NCBI GenBank assembly: GCA_964036045.1
Contig: OZ038379.1
Coordinates: forward strand, 8,742,001 to 8,806,000
Reading direction: 5' to 3'
DNA from: Eutreptiella sp. 'Long Island Sound 2002'
Lineage: Eukaryota > Protista > Euglenida
Length of the DNA stretch: 64,000 nucleotides
In this document: in pieces, positions 617-41,149 of the stretch
Layout of the letters: the number at the start of each line of letters is the position of its first letter
How positions within the stretch are numbered: position 1 is the first letter of the stretch
Program-made: the position numbers and the translations under genes
Notes under the pieces: model-generated
Seen by the model: only the letters and a program-made list of their open reading frames with translations
Databases searched by the model: none
Told to the model about the DNA's origin: nothing

Positions 617-816
617 NNNNNNNNNNNNNNNNNNNNNNNNNNNNNNNNNNNNNNNNNNNNNNNNNNNNNNNNNNNNNNNNNNNNNNNNNNNNNNNNNNNN
701 NNNNNNNNNNNNNNNNNNNNNNNNNNNNNNNNNNNNNNNNNNNNNNNNNNNNNNNNNNNNNNNNNNNNNNNNNNNNNNNNNNNNNNNNNNNNNNNNNNNN
801 NNNNNNNNNNNNNNNN
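617..816. other. Assembly gap (200 N)
   Basis: Run of N. Confidence 1.
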
Positions 817-924
817 CGTCGGCACACGCCCCGGCCAGCGTGACGCCGGCCGACTGCTCCCTTGCGCCCTGCCCAGGGAGAGCGTGTCTAGCAATTTCTC
901 CCGCCGGCACGTGCTGGGTGCCCT

Positions 925-934
925 CAACAACAAC

Positions 935-984
<50 letters not shown>
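925..984. repeat. (CAA)n followed by (TA)n microsatellite
   Basis: Directly visible. Confidence 0.95.
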
Positions 985-5280
<4,296 letters not shown>

Positions 5281-6507: not shown

Positions 6508-7544
6508 GACAATCGCGTGACACTTCACTCCACAGTTCCCCTCAATAACCATTATCGGGAATACAATAACCCTCAACCCATTGTGTGGTAAGGTCACCGC
6601 CACCACAATCACCAACTCATCGCCGGTGCCGTGAAAAACGGGAAAACCGGGGGAAACGGTGAAAAATAGTGAAAACGGTGAAGAAAGGTGAAAACTGCTG
6701 AAAAATGGTGTTTGACAAGGTTCTTGTGCCTTCCCAATGCGTTGCATACAATAGACAACATCACTAACACTATTGCCATTTGTAATTCACTTTTTACGGT
6801 GCATTCACAAAACCGTTGAATCCAAATGAGACATTTGCTTTGTGCAAGCCATGTTGCATACTATATTGCTTCTCAGAGCGCACAATATTCCACACGGAGA
6901 ATGTATGCTGAGAATAACAAGAGGTGTGTGTGATGCACAATGTTTGGATTGCATATGCATACATGGTGGGCAACCGTTCTTTCATGCTATCCCACCACCG
7001 GTGAATATCAAAAATATGGGTGTCCTCGACAGGGGAGGCTTTGTACACCACCCAATCACCACTTTCAACCGACTGGGCATGCACGTTCTGAGGGAACATC
7101 AAAGGGTACATGTCAGGGTCGGTGGGCAGATTTGGCACTTGCCTTGGGTGCAACATGCGATCCTACTTTGCAAATTCCACGTGTTTGGAGACATATTTCC
7201 AAAGTTTCGCTTGCACTGCCCCCAGGCAGTCCAGAAACTGCTTGGTCCGGTGACCACCATCACAAGCATTCACATCACCGGCCGTTTCCTGGTGCAACCG
7301 CACATCTGTGAGGTCATGCAGTATGTTCTTACTCACCAATTCTGCGGCGCGGCGCAATGCAAACATTCTGGGGGATCCATGGTGCTATGGGAATGGACAA
7401 AGCCACATGCATATGCAAACACTCATCCCACCATGTGCTTGTTAAACTTTTTACAAACCTACTCACCACCAGTTACTGACTAAAAAACGGGCACATGGTG
7501 AACTCACCGAACTCACCAGCAAAGTCAGTGACGTTACAGCCCTG
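6506..7544 (-). mobile_element. hAT DNA transposon remnant
   Basis: Minus-strand terminus CAGGGCTGTAAC at 7544-7533 (hAT-like CAGG start). Internal transposase fragment present. The opposite TIR was not found; the element abuts (TA)n. Confidence 0.65.
6794..7366 (-). pseudogene. hAT transposase C-terminal fragment (dimerization domain), one in-frame stop
   Basis: RWWDSMKERLPTMYAYAIQTLCITHTSCYSQHTFS matches the hAT dimerization pattern WW..LP.L...A...L..P.TS...ER.FS. ORFs 7163-7366 and 6794-7156 are in one frame separated by a TAG. Confidence 0.75.
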
Positions 7545-10900: not shown

Positions 10901-13044
10901 AGGGTCAGCAAGCCAGCCACCATTTCAAATATTACGAGGTGCGTGCCAATTGTATTGTGCTCTTGATTGTGCTATCTTTGTGGGAAAGAGGGGTGTTTAT
11001 GGCAGTTTTGTGGCCGAAGTGCTTGCTCTCCTTAAGGTCCATTTTGCGAGGGTGTCAAAGTGAAGCCATTCTGGGTGTACTCGCCAGACTTCTGGTTAGT
11101 GTGTATCCGCGTAACGTGAAATACACAAACAAAATTTCTGGGATACACAACCGGTCCAGAAAAGTTGTTTGGGATACACACATGGTACACACACAACAAA
11201 AGAAGAAGACATATATCTCGGTCATTCCCTTGAGAAGGGGTTTGTGGGTGTTAAAAGTGTGAGTAGCTTTGCTTGTTTCATGGTGTCCTGCAGACACCAA
11301 CAAATAGGACATCAGGATTGACATACAAAGAAAGACAGCGTCACAGTCAAAGACATATCAGATAATTGCTTACCAGGAATTGAACCACTGACTATGCATG
11401 CCCTCCCACCTTAAGCAAAAATCTGCCCGGTACACAAAAAAGGGTTACACACCTGATACACAAAAAAAAGGTCCGCGATACATCGGATACAGAAAAAAAT
11501 ATTTTTGGGATACGCGCTAGCCAAAAGACTGGTACTCGCTGCAAAGGCAGAGCGCCGTTTGTGTGGCGTGCGCATGGCGCCAAATACCCTTCTACCCCTA
11601 CCCCCCAAGCAACTGTTGTCTTTTGTTTGCACGCACCATGCAGACCATGCACCTAGGTCAATCACCCACACTTAGAAAAGTAGGGATATAAAACAGATGG
11701 AGTTTTAATGTTTGAAGATGTGCATGGGGACGGCCCATCTGCATGAATGACAGTGCTCGTAGGGGGAGTAGCAGGCACAGTACACGTGCCGGGCACTGTG
11801 CACGCATGCCGCACACACTGTGTGTACATTGGGGTTGTGTCAAGAGCCCATACCCCCCGTCTTTCTGTGACAGTTACAGGGCACTCCAGTCCAGTAATGA
11901 GAGCAGATTGAGGACTGTCTGGGGCCGCCCTGCAGCAATTGAACTACGGCCGTCACGGGGCCTTCGGCATTCTGGACTATCATGCCTGTCGATGAGGGAA
12001 CAAGGGTGTCCACAAGCACAAACATGAGGGTTGACAGCTGGGAATGGCACGTGTGTGTCGGCCACCACTTTCCTGCCGCTGGACGAAATTGTGCCAACCG
12101 CTTGTGTGGGGATTGAGGTTTGAAAAAGGCAACATGCCCCCCCTCCCCCCCCCCGCCCAAGGCTGAACGAAAGAAAGGTCCTCTCAACTAGGGCTACCAT
12201 GCACAAGCCAAAGCCGACATACCCGGAACCCTCAGCCAACAGGGGTGAGGGCTTAACACTTCACTGCCATCAGCACAATCATTCCCAGGACACCTCTCAT
12301 GCAAAAGAGGCTGCAAAGGGTTGGGGATGTAAGGAGGGTAGGGAAATCAAAAGGGCTGCAGATAGGGTGAGGTTACCGTAGATTTCCGTCCGCACAGGCA
12401 GCAATGTTGTCAACGTAACCCATTTGCTCAGACTTCGTCTTGATGGCGTGGTCGCTGGTGAGCGACTGCTTCAGCAGGGAAGTAAAGCTCAGGACGCCAT
12501 GTAGTGGAGTACGTAACTCATGGCTGATCTTGGCAACGAAGAGGCTGGCTTTCAGGTTCCGGTCAATCAAAGCACTGACGATATTGGCAAGGGCACCTGT
12601 GTTCTCCAGTAGGTTCTCAGAGATGGACTCATGCGCGATTGTGTCAATGCAACATAGCGACCCAAAGCAATGCGTCGTACTTGGAGGAATAATGGGATAC
12701 CCAATGTAACACCGCATTCCCGGTTCCCCGGTCACAAGGGGATTGTCGCAGAAAGAGGGGTGGGCTTCAGCGTTGAGGACAATAAGTGGCTTTCTGTTTT
12801 CGACAACATGGTCACAGAACGACACCATGCGGCTGATCTCAGGCACTTTCAGGCCAGTTCTGGCCTTGAACCACTGCCGGGTGTCATCCACCAGGGAAAC
12901 AAGGGCCATGGGGAAGCCCGAGATCCGACACAACATCTGCGTAATGTCATCGTACTCCTTCTCCTGAGGCGTATCAAGAATGGCTGCCTTTCGGAGCCAT
13001 TCCAAACGCTCAGCTTCATCAGATCGCCTTCTTGCGGGTGCCAT
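7952..13044 (-). CDS. GAF-sensor hybrid histidine kinase (GAF-HisKA-HATPase_c-pseudoREC-REC), spliced gene
   Basis: Exons 13044-12377, 10421-9788 and 8650-8150, with a tentative last exon at 8017-7952. Introns are GT-AG with matching phases (CG|GTAACC...CAG|G, AAG|GTATGC...TAG|GTT, GAG|GTGTGC). Motifs: ILDT..E..YDDIT/RQWFK (GAF), SHELRTPL (H-box), LLNLLSNAVKFT (N-box), DTGVGI and GGTGLGL (G boxes), VLSVDD..MNQ (REC). Confidence 0.9.
8150..8650 (-). CDS. Histidine kinase exon 3 (pseudo-receiver end, start of receiver)
   Basis: 501 nt, phase 0/0; ends TVLSVDDVDMNQIIVQAFVARLGAHVDVAANGKE|GTGTGC. Confidence 0.85.
9788..10421 (-). CDS. Histidine kinase exon 2 (HATPase_c)
   Basis: Acceptor catgcAG at 10424-10422; IVNDILD...NAVKFT...GGTGLGL; donor GTATGC at 9787. 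Confidence 0.9.
12377..13044 (-). CDS. Histidine kinase exon 1 (GAF + H-box)
   Basis: ATG at 13044 preceded by cccgtcAG; donor GTAACC at 12376. Additional upstream exons cannot be excluded. Confidence 0.9.
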
Positions 13045-14562
13045 AGCATAAAACCCTGACGGGTGCACAGAGGACTGCGCATGGGCGAGTCAGCAATTAG
13101 CTGAGGAGTGCAACGCAGTGCGAGCACCCTGCAGCTCCATCTCTGCCTGCCTCCGCAGACAACTTTTGCAGCAGGGAAATGGTGGGCAATGGAGGCAAAT
13201 GGGAAGGGAAGGAGGCGTGCGGGGCAGAGGGAGGGTTGCCATAAAGGCTGAGTAAGTGTGCCTGTTGGCACTTCACTGTTTTGGGTTGTTAGAGCCCTGG
13301 TGGCACAGGGGGGGGGGGGGTTGCTTTGAGATGGGACTGCACAGCGATTTCAACACTCAGAACGGCACCACGGCATGAAGGGCACTAGAAGTAAAATCAG
13401 GCTCAAGAAAAGAGTCCTCACAAGGCCATGGCCAACATTAGTGTGCCGCATTGGGAACAAAACTAGGTGTCATAGAATAAAGTGGATCCGGCAGGGCCAT
13501 AGCCAACGTTAGTGCCACCATTTAATTGGGAACTGGCCAAAAGAAGGATACGGAAACGGGCAGAAAGGATATCCACTCAAATGCACTCACGAAGACCGCT
13601 ACGTGCACTGGCATAAATGGAAATACTCTCTATGGCCACCAAGGCATTGGGATGCAGCCAATATACAAGCATGTTTATACGCTCCACCTTTGGTACACCA
13701 AATAGGAGGAGCAAAATATAGTACCAGAAGAAGCCTACAAAACATGCACCCGCAGAATGCATGTTTGTAGATGAGGTCAATCTTCATATCGAAGGACTTG
13801 GGCTTTGAACCAGGATTGGAGTTCCGCTGACAAGCCTTGGGCAACTCAACCACCAGCCAGTTGCCCAGCTTATTGCTGAATTGCTGGCCACGCTCCAACT
13901 GGCCAGATATATCTTTGGGGTAGCTATCCGGCACCTTGCGCCACTCTCCACGGATGAGGACCTTTGGACAGGTGCCCTCCTCTGTCCTTAAATTGTTTCT
14001 GCCCCCATGGGCCTGGCACTTGCTGCCTTGCCCCGGGGCCTAGCACCCCCCCCCCCCCCACTCCCGGACGCCACACTCCGGAATGGCTATGGAAGGTTGC
14101 GCCCTCGGCTCTGGGTCTTCCACGTTTTGCTCAAAGGAGGCATCCTTGCCTTTGAGTGCACCTTCAACTTGGGTGCGGGGGGGGGGGGGGGGCATAGAAG
14201 GGCAAGGAAGCCGAGTCACCGTTTCCAAATCATCACCAGGTGGTTCAGTGACCCACACATCGCAATTGGCATTAACAATGCCCAACACAAAGTCAACAAA
14301 ACCCGGAGGCATTGGGGTGAGGCGAACATCCGAAAAAGAACCCGATGATCCACCACCAGGTTTGTGAGGTGCAGGCTCTCAAAATCACAAGACCAACCGT
14401 TCCTTTAGAATCCAAAGGCGCGGTGCTTGGGTGTAAAGCCGTGCTTCTTGAGCGCCGCTAAGAAAAGGCGGATCAAGGAAATGGAGCTTAAGGGCTCCCA
14501 ATCCCACATGATGAAACACTCCAACCGGACACGACAATCGAACCAATACACACAAACCAATG

Positions 14563-14646
14563 CCATATCCCCAACGAGAAAGGGTCCAGTCCATATCCCC
14601 AACCGGAAAGGGGCCAATCCATATCCCCAACCGGAAAGGGGCCAAT
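14563..14646. repeat. 28-bp tandem repeat x3
   Basis: Unit ccatatccccaaccggaaaggggccaat. Confidence 0.9.
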
Positions 14647-32700: not shown

Positions 32701-35196
32701 AGAGAGTGCTCATGTCTGCCAGATATGTCTATTGGTTGTTTTCTTTCGTGCAAACACACCGGTATTGCAAACTCTCACCGCTAAACATGTAAGAACACCC
32801 CCCAAAAAAAAATTAAGAGCACAAGTAATACCTCACCAATGCATCTCCAAAAGCCTAGTAGCTGCGAAATTCGCGGCTATGCGCCTTCAAAAAGCCTGAA
32901 AAGGACGCTTTGTGCGCGCAGGACAACAATGCCAATCACTCCCTGATGCGCCCAGCTCTGCCCATAACTTTCTGGACCGCATCTTGTCCAATTTGTTGGT
33001 TCATGAGGTATCTTATGCTCGTGCAGCAACCATCATTAATGACAAGGAAGACTGCTGTTTTCCTCTCATTGTCTGAAACAGCCCCAATATAGAATGCATA
33101 TATAGATAAGATAAGAATATAGAATATAAAAATATGAAAATATGATATGATATGATAATATATAATATAAGGTAATATAGAATGCAGAATATATAGTATA
33201 GAATGACAGAAGATGCCAAGCCATCTCCTCCATTGCCTCCCGAATTCATATCCGTACTTTTCTGAAATTCATGTTTCCCCACCGCATGCAATTCCTCTCC
33301 GCCCCCTCTCCCGATGCCGTTGGCAACCATGGGGAAGGAGTAAATCATGATTCACAGCTGCAACAAGTTGGTAGACTTTGGGATGCTACGTACACATCGG
33401 TTCCCGGGCGAGACATAGTCAAGTTGAGGAATCCAGGTCAAGTCATGTACGACACATCCTTCATCAAAGGACACAATTGGTGAGTGTTATCATGGTGCTG
33501 AGCGACAGCTGACGGCATCGACTCACTGTCTGCGCACTAACCATGGGAAGGAGCCTCTTGGGGTTGGGGGGGGCGGGGTCCGCAGGCACCAACATCAGTC
33601 CCACTTCCACGGATGAGCTGCGGTCCCCAACTTGGAGGTTGTCAGGCGTTTCCAAGGACGTGGCATCATGGATTTGAGGCAAGGGGCGGAGGCCTTGAGG
33701 GACTACTTGAGGAGGATCAATGTGCTGTGCAATGCCCGAGGGTGTTGCCCCAGGGACCGACTGTGAGGAATCCGGTTGGATTTCAGGGCTGCTTAAGCAG
33801 AGCGGTACTCAATGGATCCTGCACTTTATGACTAAAGGGGGCCAAATGTCTGATCCCGGTCGGGGACTCCCCTTTTCACGACGGGATACAACACAACATA
33901 AATTCCCAGCGACATTTCCATCACCACAAGCCATAAAATGCATAACACCATTAGTCTCGCTTACAATATTGATGTGCACCACCTGTGATTGAACATGTTG
34001 GGAGGCGTTGGACCCCAAGTTTGAAGGTAATAAGCACCATGGAGGAAATTTCGGGGTCCAGCGGTGGGTGGCGGGGGGGGGGGAGGTCAGGGGGTCCAGC
34101 CAGGGGTGCGGCCAGGGCACCCAGATTCCCAACCAAAATCTGAAATTGCCGAAAGTCGGGTCCGAGAACTTGGGGGGGGGGGGCTTGGGTGCGGGTTCTG
34201 TGCGGGTTCTGAACCAGAGCCAGGCGTGTTGCCTTCACTGTTCGTAGACATGGGATCCCTCCCCCTCCATGTCTCCTACCACCATCTCATCAACACTCAC
34301 AGCAACCAACCCCTGAATCCCAATGGCACATATCTACGCCCAGCAAGTCGCAAGTGCATGCGTTCTGATTGTCATGGGCCGGCTCGACTGGGGCAAACAT
34401 CTGCAGCCCCTTGTGAAATTGATGGCCCCCCTTTGACGTGGATACCCCCCTGTGAAGTTGATAGGTTGATAGGCCCCTGTGAAGGCCCCTGTGAAGTGGA
34501 TAGACCCCTTAGGATTGCTGCGCAGCGACTGAGAGACTCGGAAAGCAGAAGAGATCGATTGAGGGACTCAGCATGCAAAAGCACAAAAAAGAGAGATTCA
34601 TGCGGGTTGTGATGTATCACTTGTATGGGAGCATGCATGTCGACCCACCCCCTCCCTGTCAACTCTGTCAAGTGGATAGCCCCCCACTATGGAGTTGATA
34701 GGCCCCAGTTTGACCCCCTGCCCCCCCTTTTGTTGTTTGTAGGCCCCCCGTTGATGTTGATGCTGCTCCCCCTTTGACGTTGATAAGCCCCCCCCCATGA
34801 AGTTGATAGCCCCCCCCCATGAAGTTGATAGGCCCCGCCCCCCTAAGACACGTGCAGGCCCCTGCTACCGCTGCAGCCTCCCACTACACCTGCGGCTTCC
34901 AGCTACCCCTGCAGCCGGCTGCACGCACTTGCTACTTGTTGTGCTGAAACTGCGGTCGTGAAGTCCGTGAAACACGGAGTTTGTGCTTCTGATCGTAAGA
35001 TATGACAGCATCAGCTTCTCCGTGCTTTCGTTGCTTCTCATCCTGAACCCCTTCCACTGTGTCCGCCTTTGTGGACGTCGAAGGGGCACATCTGTGGGAC
35101 GGATCCGGGGGCTGTGCAGTCTGCGGGTCATGCTCACCTACCCCCCCCCCAACCCCCCTCTCCCTCCCCCTCCGCGGCTGCAGCCTCCCCATTCCC

Positions 35197-37296
35197 TCAC
35201 CGAAGCAGATCCGCCGGGCTCCCCTCCCGGTGCACCACCAGGGCGTAGTTCCGCGCGCGCTGGTGCCCGCCGGACCACCCCCCGAGGTCGAGGTCCAGCG
35301 CGTTGATGCGCTGCACATACGCGTCCCTGAGCTCCGGGTCTTCGATCTTGGCCGCCATGTCGCGGGCGTAGGAGAGCTGCCGCCGCAGCGTCTTGACCGT
35401 CAAGGGCACCGCGAAGTGCTTGGCGGCCACGACGCGGAACTCGGGGCGCCGGGCGATCTGGTGCCGCACCCACCGCTCCGGCAGCTCGCGGTACGTCGAC
35501 TCGCCGGCGAGCGCCGCGGCGGTGTCGCCGACCGCCTCGACGTCGAGCACGAGCCGGTCGCGCGAGCCCGCGGCGCGGTCGAGGACGAGCTCGTACGGCT
35601 CCAGCCCCACGACCAGCAGGTGCCCCCCCGGGCGCACGGCGCGGAGCAGGCGGTCCATCATCTCGTCCGCCCCGTACGCCCAGTGCTGCTCGACGGCGCC
35701 GAGGAGGTAGTCGGCGACCACGACGTCGAAGCGCCGCGCGCGCAGGAAGGGCTCGTCGCGCCAGTTGCCGAGCGCGACCTCGACGTCCGGGACCGCGGCG
35801 ACGGCCTGCCGCAGGGCCGCGGCGCCGTAGGTCCCGTCCGCGCTCGCCGTGACCCCAGTGACCGTGCGGTACGCCTGACGCAGCAGCCAGCACATCGAGC
35901 TGAACCCCGCGCCGGCGTCGAGCACGTCGCCCCACGACTCGAGCCCCTCGTTCGCGACCGCCGTGGCGAGCCACGCATAGATCCCGTCCGTCTTGTGCTT
36001 CCGGCACTTGGCAGGCACCGCCCGCCCGCCGTCGTGCCGCCGCGACTGCTCGGCGTCTGCTGAGGCAGGGGCGGGACCAGAAGGGGCGTCGGGAGGGGGA
36101 TGCGCCCCTGCGGGGGGGAGGCGAAGCGCCATCGCCGCCATGTCCAGCGTGTGGTGCGTCAGCCGGAGGTCCCCCGAGGAGACGTACGGGAGGCGGGTCC
36201 AGCGCACGAGCTCCAGCCGCGGGTGGCGGCGGAGGATCGCCTCCAGGAACACCGCCGCGCTCGGCTCGAACGCCGGCGCGGCGTCCCCCTCCGCCGCCGG
36301 GTGGAGCGCCAGCGGCGCGCGCGGCTTCCGCGTCGCGGGCCGGCCGTACGGCGTCCCCACACGGCCCTCGTACACCGAGGCCCGGAACGGCAGCACGGCG
36401 GCCAGCAGCAGCAGCCCGCCCGGCGCGACCCGGCGCACGGCCGCGTCGAGGAGCGCCGCCGGCTCGTCGCACCGGTCGAGCACGTTCAGCAGCGCAGCGG
36501 CGGAGAAGAGGGCGGTGTCGCTCAGCTCGGCCGGGGAGCCAACCGCCCGAAACCCCCTCGCGAGCAGCTGCCTCTGCAGCGGGCGCGCGTTCTCGAGGCA
36601 GGTCACGTGCTCGGCGTCCACGCCCAGCGCGGCCGCCAGCTTCGCGGTCTCCGTGCCCGTCCCGGAGCCCACGTCGAGGAGCGTCCGCGGCGCACCGGAC
36701 GCTGGGCCCGCCACGTCCCTCACGAGCGTGTGCAGCTGCGCCTCCGACGCGGCGTAGAGCGTCGCCAGGCGCACGAAGCCCGAGGCTTCCGGGCGACTCC
36801 AGCCCAGGAGCCGCTGCAGGGCCCAGAACAGCTGCGTCTTGGCGTACAGCGCGACCTGCCCCGGCCGGCCCGCCGTCGCCGCCGCCGACTCGTTGAGGAA
36901 GCGCGCCAGCCCGGCGTCCGCCGCGGAGGGCGCGAACGTGGCGGCGAGCCGGTCCGCCGCCGCGTGCACCGCCTCGGCGGCGCTCGCGCGGCGCGCGCGC
37001 GAGCCGCGGAGCCAGTCGACGTCGACGGCGTACGCGCGGGCCGTGATGGGCGCGCCCCTCTGCGGTACCGGCGCGCTCGTGATCATCAATCCCGCCGCGA
37101 TCGCGATCAGCGCCACCAGGAGGGCGAGCAGCGTGCCCGGAAGGGCCGCGGGCGGACGGGCCTCGCTGCCCCGTGACCTTGGAGCCTCGCTGGCCGTGTC
37201 CGCACTAGCCCCAGGCGGCTGGGTCACGCTGCTCCCTGAACTTGGTTCCGTGCTGGCTGCCAATTGGCGCCTTCTTCTCAGCATTAGTCTCAACAT
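35197..37296 (-). CDS. METTL9: Intronless tandem methyltransferase: TM helix + METTL9/DREV-like histidine methyltransferase + second class I SAM methyltransferase
   Basis: 699-codon ORF from ATG 37296. LLDVGSGTG, LNVLDRCDEP..LL, AVLPF and WTRLPYVSSGD...LD match METTL9 LLDLGAGDG, LNLLDRCDQP, LVLPF and FTRLPYLCEGD...LD. Second domain: WGDVLDAGAG...GNWRD...FDVVVADYLLGA...LLVVGLEPY. Polypyrimidine tract + CAG at 37328-37326. Confidence 0.85.
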   Translation of the reverse strand: MLRLMLRRRRQLAASTEPSSGSSVTQPPGASADTASEAPRSRGSEARPPAALPGTLLALLVALIAIAAGLMITSAPVPQRGAPITARAYAVDVDWLRGSRARRASAAEAVHAAADRLAATFAPSAADAGLARFLNESAAATAGRPGQVALYAKTQLFWALQRLLGWSRPEASGFVRLATLYAASEAQLHTLVRDVAGPASGAPRTLLDVGSGTGTETAKLAAALGVDAEHVTCLENARPLQRQLLARGFRAVGSPAELSDTALFSAAALLNVLDRCDEPAALLDAAVRRVAPGGLLLLAAVLPFRASVYEGRVGTPYGRPATRKPRAPLALHPAAEGDAAPAFEPSAAVFLEAILRRHPRLELVRWTRLPYVSSGDLRLTHHTLDMAAMALRLPPAGAHPPPDAPSGPAPASADAEQSRRHDGGRAVPAKCRKHKTDGIYAWLATAVANEGLESWGDVLDAGAGFSSMCWLLRQAYRTVTGVTASADGTYGAAALRQAVAAVPDVEVALGNWRDEPFLRARRFDVVVADYLLGAVEQHWAYGADEMMDRLLRAVRPGGHLLVVGLEPYELVLDRAAGSRDRLVLDVEAVGDTAAALAGESTYRELPERWVRHQIARRPEFRVVAAKHFAVPLTVKTLRRQLSYARDMAAKIEDPELRDAYVQRINALDLDLGGWSGGHQRARNYALVVHREGSPADLLR

Positions 37297-37763
37297 TTAG
37301 TCTCTGGCCTGGGGGCTGGGGTTTGCTGCGGGAGGAAGGGCGTGAGGGGAGGAAGGCAAGGAGCTACCCTCAGGGACATAGGCATGGGCATTGGCGGGAC
37401 AGGGCACGGCAACCCTCCCAAAGCCCCCCCCCCCCCACCAGATGGCGATTATGATTACGATTAACCGGTCTGGCTGGACCAGTAGATTTATGAGAGGGCT
37501 GATGGCCAAAAAAAGCGCCAAAACAAACTACTAACCTGGATGCGGAACAGGGATATGCAATCTGCTTTCAGGTCCATAAACCACTGAGGCGCTGCACTAC
37601 TCTGCTCAATCCGTGCTCATGGGTGGCATAGAGTCTGATGATGACAACGATTACTATTGATTGCACAGCTGCACATTCATCGAAATCTGCTAATACACGT
37701 ACCTGTAAAGCGAAAAGAGCAACCATGATCGTCATTCTGTCATCACCGCCTCCCGGCTCAGCC

Positions 37764-37952
37764 ATCCCCCTGTGTGACATATAGCCCATCTGTGATTTTT
37801 TACGGGGCCCTGGACAGTTCCCGGTACAGTCTTCACCGCATGATCGGATTTCGCATGAGCAAACTGGCATATCATGCGGTGAAGAATAAACGGGTGACTG
37901 TCTAGGGCCCCGTAAAAAAACCACAGATGGACTATATGTCACACAAGGGGAT
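37764..37952. mobile_element. ~190-bp near-perfect foldback (hairpin) MITE
   Basis: atccccctgtgtgacatatagcccatctgtg..tttacggggccct.gacagt is mirrored by the right arm; the inner arms tcttcaccgcatgat/atcatgcggtgaaga also pair. Confidence 0.85.
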
Positions 37953-39958: not shown

Positions 39959-41149
39959 TCACTTCCTTCGGCCTTTACACCCGTGCTTCTCCCTGTCAAA
40001 CCACCAATGGTGGCCACCACACTCCGGGCATGCCGTTTTTGGAGGGTTTTCGCAATTAACCCAGTCTCCTGTTTTCTTGCTGCGGAAGTGGCGCTTTCCG
40101 TCTATCCACTTGAACTCCGGCTGACTCGTGCTCCCCTGCGTGCCACCTCTGCTTTTGCGCTTTGAGTGGCGCCCCGATGAGCTGGAGCTTGCCAAGGATG
40201 ATGTATCGGACGCAATGTCGCTGCTACTGTCCGTGGACGACGAATCCGAGTCGGAGGACCTGCGCCTCCCTTTTCCCCTCCGAGATGATCGGCGCTCCTT
40301 CATCTCCTTCTTTTTCTCCTTTCGCCTCTGTTTTTTGGCCTTCTTCTTGTTCCTCTTTTTGACCTCCTTTATTTTTGCCTTGACCGCGTCCTTACCCGAC
40401 TTGTCGCAATCAAGGAGCAATTGCCAGACATCGTCAATGATCGTGGACACCTCTGTCGCAGTCTCAGACTCCTCGGCCTCCATTAACCTCTCAACCAGGC
40501 GGCACAGTTTGACCGTCCACCGCGGGGCCCCGGGCCTCTTTCTCATCCACCTGGCATTTTTGAAGCTGGGCTCCTTGTACGTCAGTTCGTCCTCCTCGTC
40601 CTCCTCAGCCGCGGCCGGCCCCCCACCTCCTTCGCGCTCACCGGCTCCGGCGTCCGCCTCCTCGTCCAGAGCCATACCACTGTTGGTCTCGGGCTTTGCG
40701 TTCTTCCCCTGAGAGTGTCTCTCACCCTTGATCCCCACTCCTCTTCTCCTGCTCGCCGATTTTCCAGGCGGCTTGGCGATTAAGTCGCAGACAGCGAACC
40801 CGACGGCCGCCTCTTCCGCAGACAGGCTGAACGCAGTCACCTCTACTCCCCAGGCAAGTGTCAGCCCATACAGCAGCGCGTCGACGTACCGCTGCGGATC
40901 AGGGGATTGAAACGAGATCCCCGGCGTCTCATGGAAGGTCCTGGCCAGCTTCACCGCACTCTAGCTGACTCCGTCCCGAGACCATCCTGTCACGCCCGCC
41001 ACCAGCACCTCTGTACGATGCTGAAGCGGGATCATACGGGCCATCCAGGGCGTCTGAATCAGGTGGGCCCATGCTGTTGACTTCGCCGCGGGGTCCTCGT
41101 CTTTTAGACGTCTCCAGTCCCAAGCCCCATCATTTTTGGCCGAGCCCAT
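39959..41149 (-). pseudogene. Retroelement gag/ORF1-like reading frame with one in-frame stop
   Basis: ORFs 40961-41149 and 39959-40954 are in one frame separated by TAG. Intronless; Lys/Arg-rich and Ser-rich linker; C-terminal CPECGGHH zinc-knuckle-like motif. No pol downstream. Confidence 0.5.

What the first reader, a model, noticed from the sequence alone, without database searches (positions are those of the whole stretch)
35197..37296. METTL9-type histidine methyltransferase fused to a second SAM methyltransferase
Seen: one uninterrupted ORF with a basic N-terminus, a hydrophobic helix (LLALLVALIAIAAGLMI), a METTL9/DREV-like domain, a Pro/Ala linker and a second complete class I methyltransferase fold. 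Known: METTL9 makes 1-methylhistidine at HxH motifs and is normally a single-domain protein. From memory, the second domain (WG..LDAG.G / GNW.D / ADYLLGA / VG.EPY / YRE.P..WV) resembles an uncharacterised family found in proteobacteria and some protists. Inference: a membrane-anchored dual methyltransferase that may act sequentially (e.g. two positions or two substrates); I do not know this architecture as described.
Basis: partly seen in the sequence, partly recalled or inferred. Interest (0 to 1): 0.75.

Follow-up and report, generated by a model that had tools for sequence, protein, structure and literature searches.

The report
Membrane-anchored METTL9-like double methyltransferase gene
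An alga-type gene really does join a METTL9-like histidine methyltransferase to a second, unnamed methyltransferase behind a membrane anchor. In bacteria, free-standing relatives of that second half sit next to zinc-starvation genes whose products carry His-x-His loops, so the enzyme may tune zinc-binding histidine clusters.

Summary
Window 35197-37296 (minus strand) is one uninterrupted 699-aa ORF. It encodes a basic N-terminus, one hydrophobic helix, a DREV/METTL9 domain (Pfam PF05219, E 1.8e-19), a disordered Pro/Ala linker and a complete second class I SAM methyltransferase domain (D2; AlphaFold pLDDT 95).

The same architecture recurs in at least 27 protein clusters: Cymbomonas, Aureococcus, an MMETSP transcript and many marine metagenome proteins. 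All are unnamed, and I found no paper describing it.

Domain 1 keeps the METTL9 SAM-binding and substrate-histidine pocket residues. Its N-terminal peptide-binding loop differs from canonical METTL9.

D2 matches no named family. Stand-alone relatives of about 250 aa occur in at least 209 bacterial species genomes, and also in diatoms and oomycetes.

New here: in 46 of 80 bacterial loci the D2 homologue lies beside a ZnuD-like zinc TonB receptor. Every full-length receptor checked carries an alternating His (HxH) loop, and most have Zur-operator-like boxes. In Halomonas the neighbour is the zinc-sparing enzyme FolE2.

My reading, with shown and inferred parts kept apart below, is a two-headed enzyme acting on His-rich zinc-binding segments or zinc ligands. 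D2's substrate is unknown. RNA support for this exact gene is weak.

The parts
35197..37296 (-). Complete single-exon ORF of 699 aa plus the TGA stop: a two-domain methyltransferase gene
   Evidence: ORF; full-length relatives at 42-58% identity and about 90% coverage
37144..37296 (-). N-terminal extension, residues 1-51: Arg-rich start, then a Ser/Pro/Ala-rich disordered stretch. Most relatives lack it
   Evidence: pLDDT under 50 for residues 15-50
37075..37143 (-). Single hydrophobic helix, residues 52-74: a predicted membrane anchor or signal anchor, conserved in position across the family
   Evidence: hydropathy 2.63; comparable segments in 18 of the 19 relatives tabulated, i.e. the full-length fusions plus stand-alone P0046, P0058 and P0095; P0095's strongest segment lies elsewhere; helix; alignment
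36133..36960 (-). Domain 1, residues 113-388: DREV/METTL9-type SAM methyltransferase. Residues equivalent to the human SAM site and substrate-His pocket are E235, N271, D274, R275, Y371, D376 and L384. H382 stands where human Y306 is
   Evidence: alignment to 7y9c and 8bvi; residue roles from PMC10073072 and PMC12269839
36025..36120 (-). Pro/Ala-rich interdomain linker, about residues 393-424; variable in length and sequence among relatives
   Evidence: alignment columns about 470-540; pLDDT under 50 for residues 401-423
35200..36024 (-). Domain 2, residues 425-699: a complete class I SAM methyltransferase fold of an unnamed family. Conserved features are motif I at D460/G462/G464, T483 in place of the usual acidic residue, N511-W512, D529-Y530, E566-P567-Y568, Y602-R603-E604 and R682-N683-Y684
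37326..37360 (-). Pyrimidine-rich tract ending in AG, 30 nt upstream of the ATG. This may be a splice acceptor, either spliced-leader or 5'-UTR intron (inference only)
   Evidence: sequence read directly

Best explanation
Shown: this is an intact, intron-free gene for a 699-aa protein. It has one N-terminal hydrophobic anchor helix and two complete SAM-methyltransferase domains joined by a flexible linker, and it belongs to a conserved, unnamed family of marine algae and protists.

Inferred, step 1: domain 1 is an active protein-histidine N-pros (N1) methyltransferase of the METTL9 type. The residues that hold SAM and clamp the substrate imidazole in human METTL9 are all kept. The N-terminal loop that reads the residues around His-x-His is different, so its sequence preference probably differs from canonical METTL9.

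Inferred, step 2: domain 2 is also catalytically active. It belongs to a family whose free-standing bacterial members are part of the zinc-starvation (Zur) response. These genes lie in apparent operons with ZnuD-like outer-membrane zinc receptors that carry long alternating-histidine loops, or with FolE2.

Inferred, step 3: the fused enzyme therefore sits on a membrane and puts two different methyl marks on histidine-rich zinc-binding segments of zinc-handling proteins, or on a histidine-type zinc ligand. This would tune how tightly zinc is held. Neither the second mark nor the substrate is known.
For: **Gene and fusion**
- ORF and domain calls.
- 27 related clusters share both domains. They include Cymbomonas (P0003), Aureococcus (P0021-24) and a complete MMETSP transcript (P0016).

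**Domain 1 (human METTL9 residue = residue here)**
- Kept: E174=E235, N210=N271, D213=D274, R214=R275, Y295=Y371, D300=D376, L308=L384. All are invariant or nearly so in the family.
- Roles of these residues come from PMC10073072.

**Domain 2**
- pLDDT 95 and a class I methyltransferase fold with Z up to 18.8.
- Motif I, the GNW adenine site and many polar or aromatic residues are invariant from bacteria to algae.

**Zinc link of the bacterial D2 family**
- 46 of 80 species loci have a ZnuD-like TonB receptor directly adjacent, in co-directional, convergent or divergent arrangement. These match NCBIfam NF038289 at E 1e-192 to 1e-206.
- 25 of 36 receptor upstream regions match TGTTATNNNATAACA with at most 2 mismatches, against 51 of 1200 random windows. 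That operator shape is taken from Caulobacter Zur sites.
- Sites with at most 1 mismatch concentrate at these promoters.
- In Halomonas the order is box, FolE2, D2 homologue.
- A Zur gene lies beside one such cluster.
- A RefSeq plasmid repeats the receptor-D2 pair, with a COG0523-type GTPase nearby.
- All 37 full-length receptors carry 3-27 HxH motifs (median 8), and all include a GH[SNAGT]H motif.
- METTL9 methylates HxH in zinc transporters (PMC10073072, PMC13027442).
Against: - No enzymatic data exist for any member of either subfamily.
- Domain 2 lacks the usual acidic residue at the end of strand 2 (invariant T483). Its fold matches are generic and are mostly small-molecule methyltransferases.
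- The bacterial D2 proteins have no signal peptide, whereas the receptor's His loop is extracellular. Direct methylation of that loop would have to occur before export.
- 34 of 80 bacterial loci show no zinc gene next to the homologue.
- Gene neighbourhood in bacteria need not carry over to algae.
- Canonical substrate-loop residues of METTL9 (N118, R123, G124, M126) are replaced in domain 1, and Y306 is His in this protein.
- The model gives no fixed arrangement of the two domains (pTM 0.53).
- Membrane topology is undetermined: positive charges flank both sides of the helix.
- RNA support for this exact gene is one identical 187-nt contig in an estuary metatranscriptome.
Confidence: 0.42

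Rival explanations
1. Domain 2 is a small-molecule methyltransferase acting on a metabolite, lipid head group or metallophore-like zinc ligand. It is fused to the METTL9-like domain only for shared localisation or regulation, and the two domains do not share a protein substrate.
For: The best structural neighbours are small-molecule or natural-product methyltransferases such as NodS, TehB, BioC, Tam, UbiG and RebM. The bacterial homologues are cytoplasmic and lie downstream of an uptake receptor, which fits processing of an imported or exported ligand. The linker is long and disordered, and no fixed domain packing is predicted.
Against: Fold similarity is generic: Z plateaus at 16-19 across hundreds of unrelated methyltransferases. 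No biosynthetic genes for a metallophore recur beside the bacterial homologues. The fusion partner is a protein-modifying enzyme.
Confidence: 0.25
2. The zinc link is a feature of the bacterial branch only. In algae the fused enzyme methylates membrane or organellar proteins unrelated to zinc, for example ER or mitochondrial proteins as reported for human METTL9. Domain 2 would then be an unrelated second protein methyltransferase.
For: Eukaryotic D2 sequences form their own clade, well separated from the bacterial ones (SH-aLRT 95), at only 31-34% identity to the query D2 in the alignment. The Arg-rich N-terminus of this protein resembles a mitochondrial presequence (my reading of the sequence). 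34 of 80 bacterial loci lack zinc neighbours.
Against: Two independent lines converge on His-x-His and zinc. One is fusion to an HxH-specific enzyme type in eukaryotes. The other is adjacency to HxH-loop zinc receptors and FolE2 in three proteobacterial classes.
Confidence: 0.2
3. One of the two domains is a non-catalytic module, acting as a SAM sensor, scaffold or substrate-docking domain, so the protein is a single-activity enzyme.
For: Domain 2 has Thr instead of the canonical acidic ribose-binding residue. In this protein domain 1 has His where more than 90% of relatives and human METTL9 have Tyr306. Non-catalytic roles of METTL9 are reported in vertebrates (title and abstract of PMC12313917).
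Against: In both domains motif I and the putative active-site residues are invariant across distant lineages. That degree of conservation is unusual for dead enzymes.
Confidence: 0.08
4. This is a gene-model artefact: two neighbouring genes, or an unnoticed intron, merely give the appearance of one ORF in this genome.
For: There is no full-length RNA evidence for this locus. High GC content produces long ORFs in several frames.
Against: The frame is open and homologous to relatives from the anchor helix to the last strand without a break. Transcript-derived proteins of other species carry the same fusion.
Confidence: 0.03

Closest known systems
METTL9 / DREV (human METTL9, PDB 7Y9C/7YF2/8GZE; Ostreococcus tauri METTL9, PDB 8BVI)
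   Same: - Matches Pfam PF05219 above the gathering score.
- Same seven-beta-strand fold class.
- Keeps the SAM ligands (E174, N210, Y295 equivalents) and the substrate-imidazole pocket (D213, R214, Y295, D300, L308 equivalents).
- Has an N-terminal hydrophobic segment, which from my own knowledge human METTL9 also has; this was not checked in the papers read here.
   Different: - About 25-30% identity only; this is my rough estimate from the alignment, since the tool reports 40-48 bits but no identity figure.
- The N-terminal substrate loop (human N118, R123, G124, M126) is replaced by a family-specific DASGF..A.LY motif.
- Y306 is His in this protein.
- It carries a whole second methyltransferase domain, whereas every METTL9 characterised in the papers read here is single-domain (PMC12269839, PMC13027442).
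Stand-alone bacterial 'class I SAM-dependent methyltransferase / hypothetical protein' of about 250 aa next to ZnuD-like receptors (for example Novosphingobium resinovorum pHR1a WP_211151933.1; Xanthomonas, Luteimonas, Sphingopyxis and Alcaligenes loci L011-L084)
   Same: Homologous to domain 2 over its whole length (31-34% identity to this protein's D2). The LDAGxG, VTA, G[ND]W, ADYLLGA, GLEP and YRE.P..W motifs are shared, and the predicted fold is the same (ESM Atlas TM-score 0.80-0.86).
   Different: These proteins have no membrane anchor and no DREV domain, and are cytoplasmic. Their function is also unknown. No NCBIfam or specific Pfam model covers them.
Zur-regulated methyltransferases noted in zinc-starvation studies (P. 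aeruginosa PA1921 beside TonB receptor PA1922; M. smegmatis MSMEG_6055)
   Same: These are uncharacterised SAM methyltransferase genes that share Zur sites with zinc-uptake genes and are induced by zinc depletion (PMC4542158, 10.1101/2021.05.04.442697, PMC7174638).
   Different: I could not obtain their sequences, so whether they belong to the domain-2 family is untested.
Generic small-molecule class I methyltransferases (BH2331 1VL5, NodS 3OFJ, YcgJ 1XXL, TehB, BioC, Tam)
   Same: Best structural matches of domain 2 (Z 16-19, 150-235 aligned residues).
   Different: Sequence identity is 8-22%. No match stands above the rest, and the C-terminal substrate-binding region and conserved residues differ.

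Membership tests
METTL9/DREV protein-histidine N-pros methyltransferases (Pfam PF05219) | Sequence match to the DREV profile above Pfam's gathering score | tested here: met
   70.4 bits against a cut-off of 26, E 1.8e-19, residues 113-388, profile positions 8-260 of 265. The only PDB sequence hits are METTL9 chains.
METTL9/DREV protein-histidine N-pros methyltransferases (Pfam PF05219) | SAM-binding residues (human E174, N210, Y295) | tested here: met
   These correspond to E235, N271 and Y371, which are invariant or nearly so in 17 relatives. Their roles are taken from PMC10073072.
METTL9/DREV protein-histidine N-pros methyltransferases (Pfam PF05219) | Substrate-histidine pocket (human D213, R214, Y295, plus D300 and L308) | tested here: met
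   These correspond to D274, R275, Y371, D376 and L384, all conserved. The V241 equivalent was placed by eye at V301 and not checked further.
METTL9/DREV protein-histidine N-pros methyltransferases (Pfam PF05219) | HxH-reading elements (human N118, R123, G124, M126, C297, Y306) | tested here: not met
   The loop NGLLGRGSMF of human and Ostreococcus METTL9 is replaced by DASGF..A.LY in the whole fusion family. C297 is Ser, as in Ostreococcus. Y306 is Tyr in more than 90% of relatives but His382 here.
METTL9/DREV protein-histidine N-pros methyltransferases (Pfam PF05219) | 1-methylhistidine formation at HxH motifs | not testable with these tools
   This needs an enzyme assay.
Class I (seven-beta-strand) SAM-dependent methyltransferases (domain 2) | Rossmann-like fold with glycine-rich motif I and an adenine-binding motif after strand 3 | tested here: met
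   AlphaFold pLDDT 95; Foldseek E about 1e-10 to many methyltransferases; Z up to 18.8. LDAGAG and GNW are invariant. Methyltransf_11/25/23 score above or near their cut-offs.
Class I (seven-beta-strand) SAM-dependent methyltransferases (domain 2) | Acidic residue at the end of strand 2 binding the ribose hydroxyls | tested here: not met
   Strand 2 ends in an invariant Thr483-Ala484 ('VTA') in both algal and bacterial members.
Any named methyltransferase family for domain 2 (Pfam-specific, NCBIfam, PDB) | Specific profile or close solved relative | tested here: not met
   Only generic Pfam methyltransferase models match. NCBIfam gives nothing for six bacterial members. A profile search against PDB gives a best E of 0.0019, to CypM.
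Zur (zinc-starvation) regulon membership of the bacterial domain-2 family | Conserved adjacency to zinc-uptake or zinc-sparing genes and Zur-operator-like sites | tested here: met
   46 of 80 loci lie next to a ZnuD-like receptor. Operator-like boxes occur in 25 of 36 upstream regions against 4% of random windows. FolE2, Zur and COG0523 genes are neighbours in some loci. Actual regulation was not measured.

The most novel reading that the evidence does not exclude
Domain 2 and its bacterial relatives are a previously unrecognised class of enzyme that modifies histidine-rich (HxH) zinc-binding loops. The modification would be a second kind of histidine methylation, or another SAM-dependent transfer. 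Bacteria would deploy it during zinc starvation and marine algae would couple it to METTL9-type N-pros methylation, giving a two-step 'zinc-affinity switch' on zinc-handling proteins.
Probability: 0.22. Interest if true: 0.85.

Novelty: new variant of a known kind. Interest (0 to 1): 0.66.

Why it matters
Protein histidine methylation is a young field, with only four human enzymes known (abstract of PMC13027442). METTL9 is its only N-pros writer, and its best-documented targets are HxH motifs of zinc transporters.

A conserved algal family fuses a METTL9-like domain to a second methyltransferase. That second domain's bacterial relatives sit in zinc-starvation gene clusters beside HxH-loop zinc receptors. 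Together these facts give a concrete, testable lead to a new modifying enzyme for metal-binding histidine clusters.

It also points to a possible regulatory layer of zinc acquisition. Zinc is commonly regarded as a scarce nutrient for marine phytoplankton; I did not check this in the papers read here. In addition, the finding assigns a first functional context to a widespread bacterial 'hypothetical' or 'class I SAM-dependent methyltransferase' family.

Tried and rejected
1. **A specific solved or named relative for domain 2.** Foldseek against PDB, VIA-align wide, a PDB profile search, Pfam and NCBIfam gave only generic methyltransferase matches.

2. **Fixed packing of the two domains.** The full-length model has pTM 0.53 and a disordered linker, so it offers no support for facing active sites.

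3. **Origin from the green-algal plastid donor.** Cymbomonas is among the nearest relatives by identity. Neither the domain-2 tree nor the full-length tree resolves a sister relationship, so I do not claim endosymbiotic transfer.

4. **RNA evidence.** Only Logan contigs were available. The organism's own runs cover gene and flanks alike, so they look like DNA. The one RNA-library hit is a 187-nt identical contig at 35165-35351. This is too little to show the transcript's structure.

5. **A contig joint that skips 35158-37413, the whole gene.** It has only 18-20 nt on its shorter side, in low-complexity flanks, so I treated it as spurious.

6. **Topology by the positive-inside rule.** Both flanks of the helix are positively charged across the family, so this is undecided.

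7. **Context of bacterial DREV-like proteins (P0101, P0102).** Their neighbours are uninformative.

8. **The actinobacterial-type context of P0074.** It lies next to LytR-CpsA-Psr genes with no zinc genes. I did not pursue it.

9. **Emiliania huxleyi.** It has the anchor plus domain 1 only, with no domain 2 within 5 kb. The two halves therefore also exist apart.

10. **PA1921 and MSMEG_6055.** These could not be checked for family membership because no tool here serves those genomes.

I did not run the large all-protein profile search, because no claim here rests on the absence of relatives.
Full report
**1.

Window 35197-37296 on the minus strand is one open frame of 699 codons, from ATG to TGA. 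The region is 65-68% G+C against about 50% in the flanks, so other frames also carry long ORFs. Homology decides which frame is real.

Pfam places a DREV domain (PF05219) at residues 113-388, with E 1.8e-19 and 70.4 bits against a cut-off of 26. It also places generic class I methyltransferase models at about residues 457-563.

By sequence, the only solved structures matched are METTL9 chains: human 7Y9C, 8GZE and 9VPQ, and Ostreococcus 8BVI.

A single strongly hydrophobic segment lies at residues 54-72. It is predicted as helix 52-74 and is preceded by a basic, disordered 50-residue extension. A Pro/Ala-rich stretch at about residues 393-424 is disordered.

**2. The fusion is a conserved family, not a quirk of this locus**

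A word-based search found 27 clusters related over most of the length (E down to 1e-218, 42-58% identity, about 90% coverage). All carry both domains. They include:
- a Cymbomonas tetramitiformis 'hypothetical protein';
- several Aureococcus anophagefferens gene models;
- a complete MMETSP transcript (P0016);
- JGI proteins named only 'SAM-dependent methyltransferase';
- many marine metagenome proteins.

In the 17-sequence alignment the anchor helix, a short AP.P.RG.PI motif after it, both catalytic domains and the position of the variable linker are all conserved.

The two halves also occur apart. Emiliania huxleyi has the anchor plus domain 1 only, with no domain 2 within 5 kb. Domain 2 occurs alone in bacteria, diatoms and oomycetes, and some eukaryotic stand-alone forms have their own N-terminal hydrophobic helix.

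The papers I searched and read on METTL9 orthologues, structures and reviews describe only single-domain enzymes. None mentions this architecture or these organisms.

**3. Domain 1**

I mapped the residues defined in the human METTL9 complexes (PMC10073072) and in the Ostreococcus structure paper (PMC12269839) through the HMMER alignments onto the family alignment.

| Human METTL9 residue | Role | Residue here |
|---|---|---|
| E174 | SAM ribose ligand | E235 |
| N210 | SAM carboxylate / imidazole C2 contact | N271 |
| D213 | catalytic acid holding the imidazole N3 | D274 |
| R214 | substrate-His pocket | R275 |
| Y295 | substrate-His pocket | Y371 |
| D300 | substrate binding | D376 |
| L308 | substrate binding | L384 |

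All of these are invariant or nearly so in the family. This is good sequence evidence for an enzyme that methylates the N-pros nitrogen of an imidazole.

The N-terminal loop that contacts the middle and flanking residues of His-x-His is a different matter. In human METTL9 this loop contains N118, R123, G124 and M126, and it is conserved in Ostreococcus. Throughout the fusion family it is replaced by a different conserved motif.

Human Y306 is Tyr in more than 90% of relatives but His382 in this protein.

I therefore file domain 1 as a divergent DREV subfamily. It has an intact histidine pocket and a probably altered sequence context.

**4. Domain 2**

Residues 425-699, modelled with 30 aligned relatives, give a very confident class I methyltransferase fold (pLDDT 95, pTM 0.91).

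Structural searches return hundreds of methyltransferases at similar scores: Foldseek E about 1e-10 with TM-scores of 0.5-0.6, and VIA-align Z of 16-19. No match stands out.

A profile search against PDB sequences gives nothing better than E 0.002. NCBIfam has no model for the bacterial members.

Motif I (LDAGAG), the GNW site after strand 3 and the strand-4 motif ADYLLGA are invariant from bacteria to algae. So are many polar and aromatic residues in the C-terminal half.

One oddity is that the acidic residue normally at the end of strand 2 is an invariant Thr.

ESM Atlas searches by features and by shape put the domain with unnamed clusters of about 255-307 residues. These come from Pseudomonadota, diatoms and oomycetes, with TM-scores of 0.80-0.86.

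In a tree, eukaryotic domain-2 sequences form one clade apart from the bacterial ones (SH-aLRT 95).

**5. What the bacterial relatives sit next to**

A scan of one genome per bacterial species found 209 relatives, and the best 80 loci were fetched.

My own ORF calling and clustering, followed by tblastn, show a receptor gene directly adjacent in 46 of the 80 loci. It is a TonB-dependent receptor of about 700 residues. Three arrangements occur:
- upstream and co-directional with a gap of a few to some tens of bases in about 30 loci (Xanthomonadales, Steroidobacter, Alcaligenes, Sphingomonas, Croceibacterium);
- convergent in Sphingopyxis;
- divergent in Brevundimonas and Phenylobacterium.

These receptors match the NCBIfam model for the zinc-piracy receptor ZnuD over their full length (E 1e-192 to 1e-206, 640-686 bits). 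That is below the strict 950-bit cut-off of that 'exception' model but far above any other family.

I took the operator shape from the experimentally defined Caulobacter Zur sites, TGTTAT-N3-ATAACA (PMC4176598).
- 25 of 36 receptor upstream regions match with at most two mismatches, against 51 of 1200 random windows of the same loci.
- Sites with at most one mismatch number only 26 in 906 kb, and they cluster at these promoters.

Other zinc-related neighbours appear in individual loci:
- In two Halomonas genomes such a box precedes FolE2, followed directly by the domain-2 homologue. From my own knowledge, FolE2 is the zinc-independent GTP cyclohydrolase typical of Zur regulons.
- One locus has the Zur gene itself next to the receptor.
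- A RefSeq-annotated Novosphingobium plasmid repeats the receptor-homologue pair, with a COG0523-type GTPase 4.4 kb away.

All 37 full-length receptors carry an alternating-histidine loop. They have 3-27 HxH motifs (median 8), against a background median of 0 per 700 residues. The middle residues are mostly Asp, Glu, Gly, Ser or Pro, and every receptor includes a GH[SNAGT]H motif. That motif type matches the GHSH recognised by human METTL9 in SLC39A5 and S100A9.

**6. Reading**

Two independent kinds of association point the same way. In eukaryotes domain 2 is fused to an enzyme type specialised for His-x-His motifs of zinc-binding proteins. In three classes of Proteobacteria it is encoded with zinc-starvation genes, most often a receptor bearing a long His-x-His loop.

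The best-supported explanation is that the algal protein is a membrane-tethered, two-activity enzyme working on histidine-rich zinc-binding segments or a histidine-type zinc ligand. Domain 1 would supply N-pros methylation and domain 2 a second, still unknown modification.

Steps shown:
- gene integrity;
- conservation of the architecture;
- an intact histidine pocket in domain 1;
- fold and motif conservation in domain 2;
- the bacterial zinc neighbourhood.

Steps inferred:
- catalytic activity of either domain;
- the substrate of domain 2;
- carry-over of the zinc link to algae;
- membrane identity and topology.

Three points weigh against a direct receptor-loop substrate in bacteria. The homologues lack signal peptides. 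34 loci lack zinc neighbours. The nearest folds are small-molecule enzymes. For these reasons the small-molecule rival keeps substantial weight.

**7. Organism, expression and other checks**

Earlier notes of this scan call the genome a marine euglenid (Eutreptiella). I did not verify this.

Runs labelled with the organism hold the locus at 54-97% of sampled words and cover gene and flanks alike, as DNA would. An estuary metatranscriptome holds one identical 187-nt contig over the last 51 codons and 32 nt of the 3' flank. Expression of this particular gene is therefore only weakly supported. The fusion as a transcript is supported by other species' transcriptomes.

A pyrimidine tract ending in AG lies 30 nt upstream of the ATG. 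It could be a splice or spliced-leader acceptor.

Phylogenies do not resolve whether the gene came from the green-algal plastid donor.

The reads tool was given 3301 letters.

**8. Novelty and verdict**

The protein is a new variant of a known kind: a METTL9/DREV-family enzyme with an added methyltransferase domain. The family is present but unnamed in public databases, and I found no published description.

The zinc-regulon context of the domain-2 family also appears undescribed in the papers I could search. Zur-regulated 'methyltransferases' of unknown function have been listed in zinc-starvation studies: PA1921 in P. aeruginosa (PMC4542158; 10.1101/2021.05.04.442697) and MSMEG_6055 in M. 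smegmatis (PMC7174638). Their relationship to domain 2 could not be tested here.

Interest is 0.66. The anatomy is solid and the functional lead is specific and cheap to test, but the mechanism rests on association.

Noticed in passing
window 35120-35196 (just 3' of the stop codon on the minus strand): A G-rich low-complexity run. Logan contig depth there reaches 13,000-14,600 in run X3, and a 31-nt contig of depth 360 appears in the RNA run. This is a simple-sequence effect, not expression.
   Followed up: partly
window 37708-37900: A dispersed repeat upstream of the gene. Depth is 800-5000 and many contigs break or diverge at 37766 and 37798.
   Followed up: no
window 35158 to 37413: One or two contigs in runs X2 and X3 join these two points, which would skip the whole gene (2254 nt). 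The shorter side is only 18-20 nt, in low-complexity sequence, with extra letters in between. This is probably spurious, but a presence/absence allele is not excluded.
   Followed up: no
L008:5001-6122 (Emiliania huxleyi KB870141.1, EMIHUDRAFT_97165): A single-exon gene for the anchor helix plus domain 1 only. It has Gly where human METTL9 has D300 (D376 here), and no domain 2 lies within 5 kb.
   Followed up: partly
L070:4851-6732 and L077:4946-6771 (Halomonas): A Zur-operator-like box, then FolE2 (NF010200, 308 bits, scanned in L070; the L077 gene is assigned by clustering with it), then the domain-2 homologue on one strand. This looks like a small zinc-starvation operon without a receptor.
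   Followed up: partly
L013, L025, L028, L033, L036, L037, L040 at about 6755-6825: A second Zur-operator-like box lies just downstream of the domain-2 homologue in Luteimonas, Pseudoxanthomonas and Stenotrophomonas. It sits ahead of a small ORF of about 150-210 aa that has no family match.
   Followed up: partly
L001:2738-6759 (metagenome contig, actinobacterial-type context): Here a domain-2 homologue (P0074) overlaps the end of the second of two LytR-CpsA-Psr genes. No zinc gene is nearby, so this context differs from the proteobacterial one.
   Followed up: no
window 39959-40954 (minus strand): A 331-aa ORF with Lys/Ser-rich low-complexity stretches and a Cys/His-rich C-terminal end. It was not examined.
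   Followed up: no
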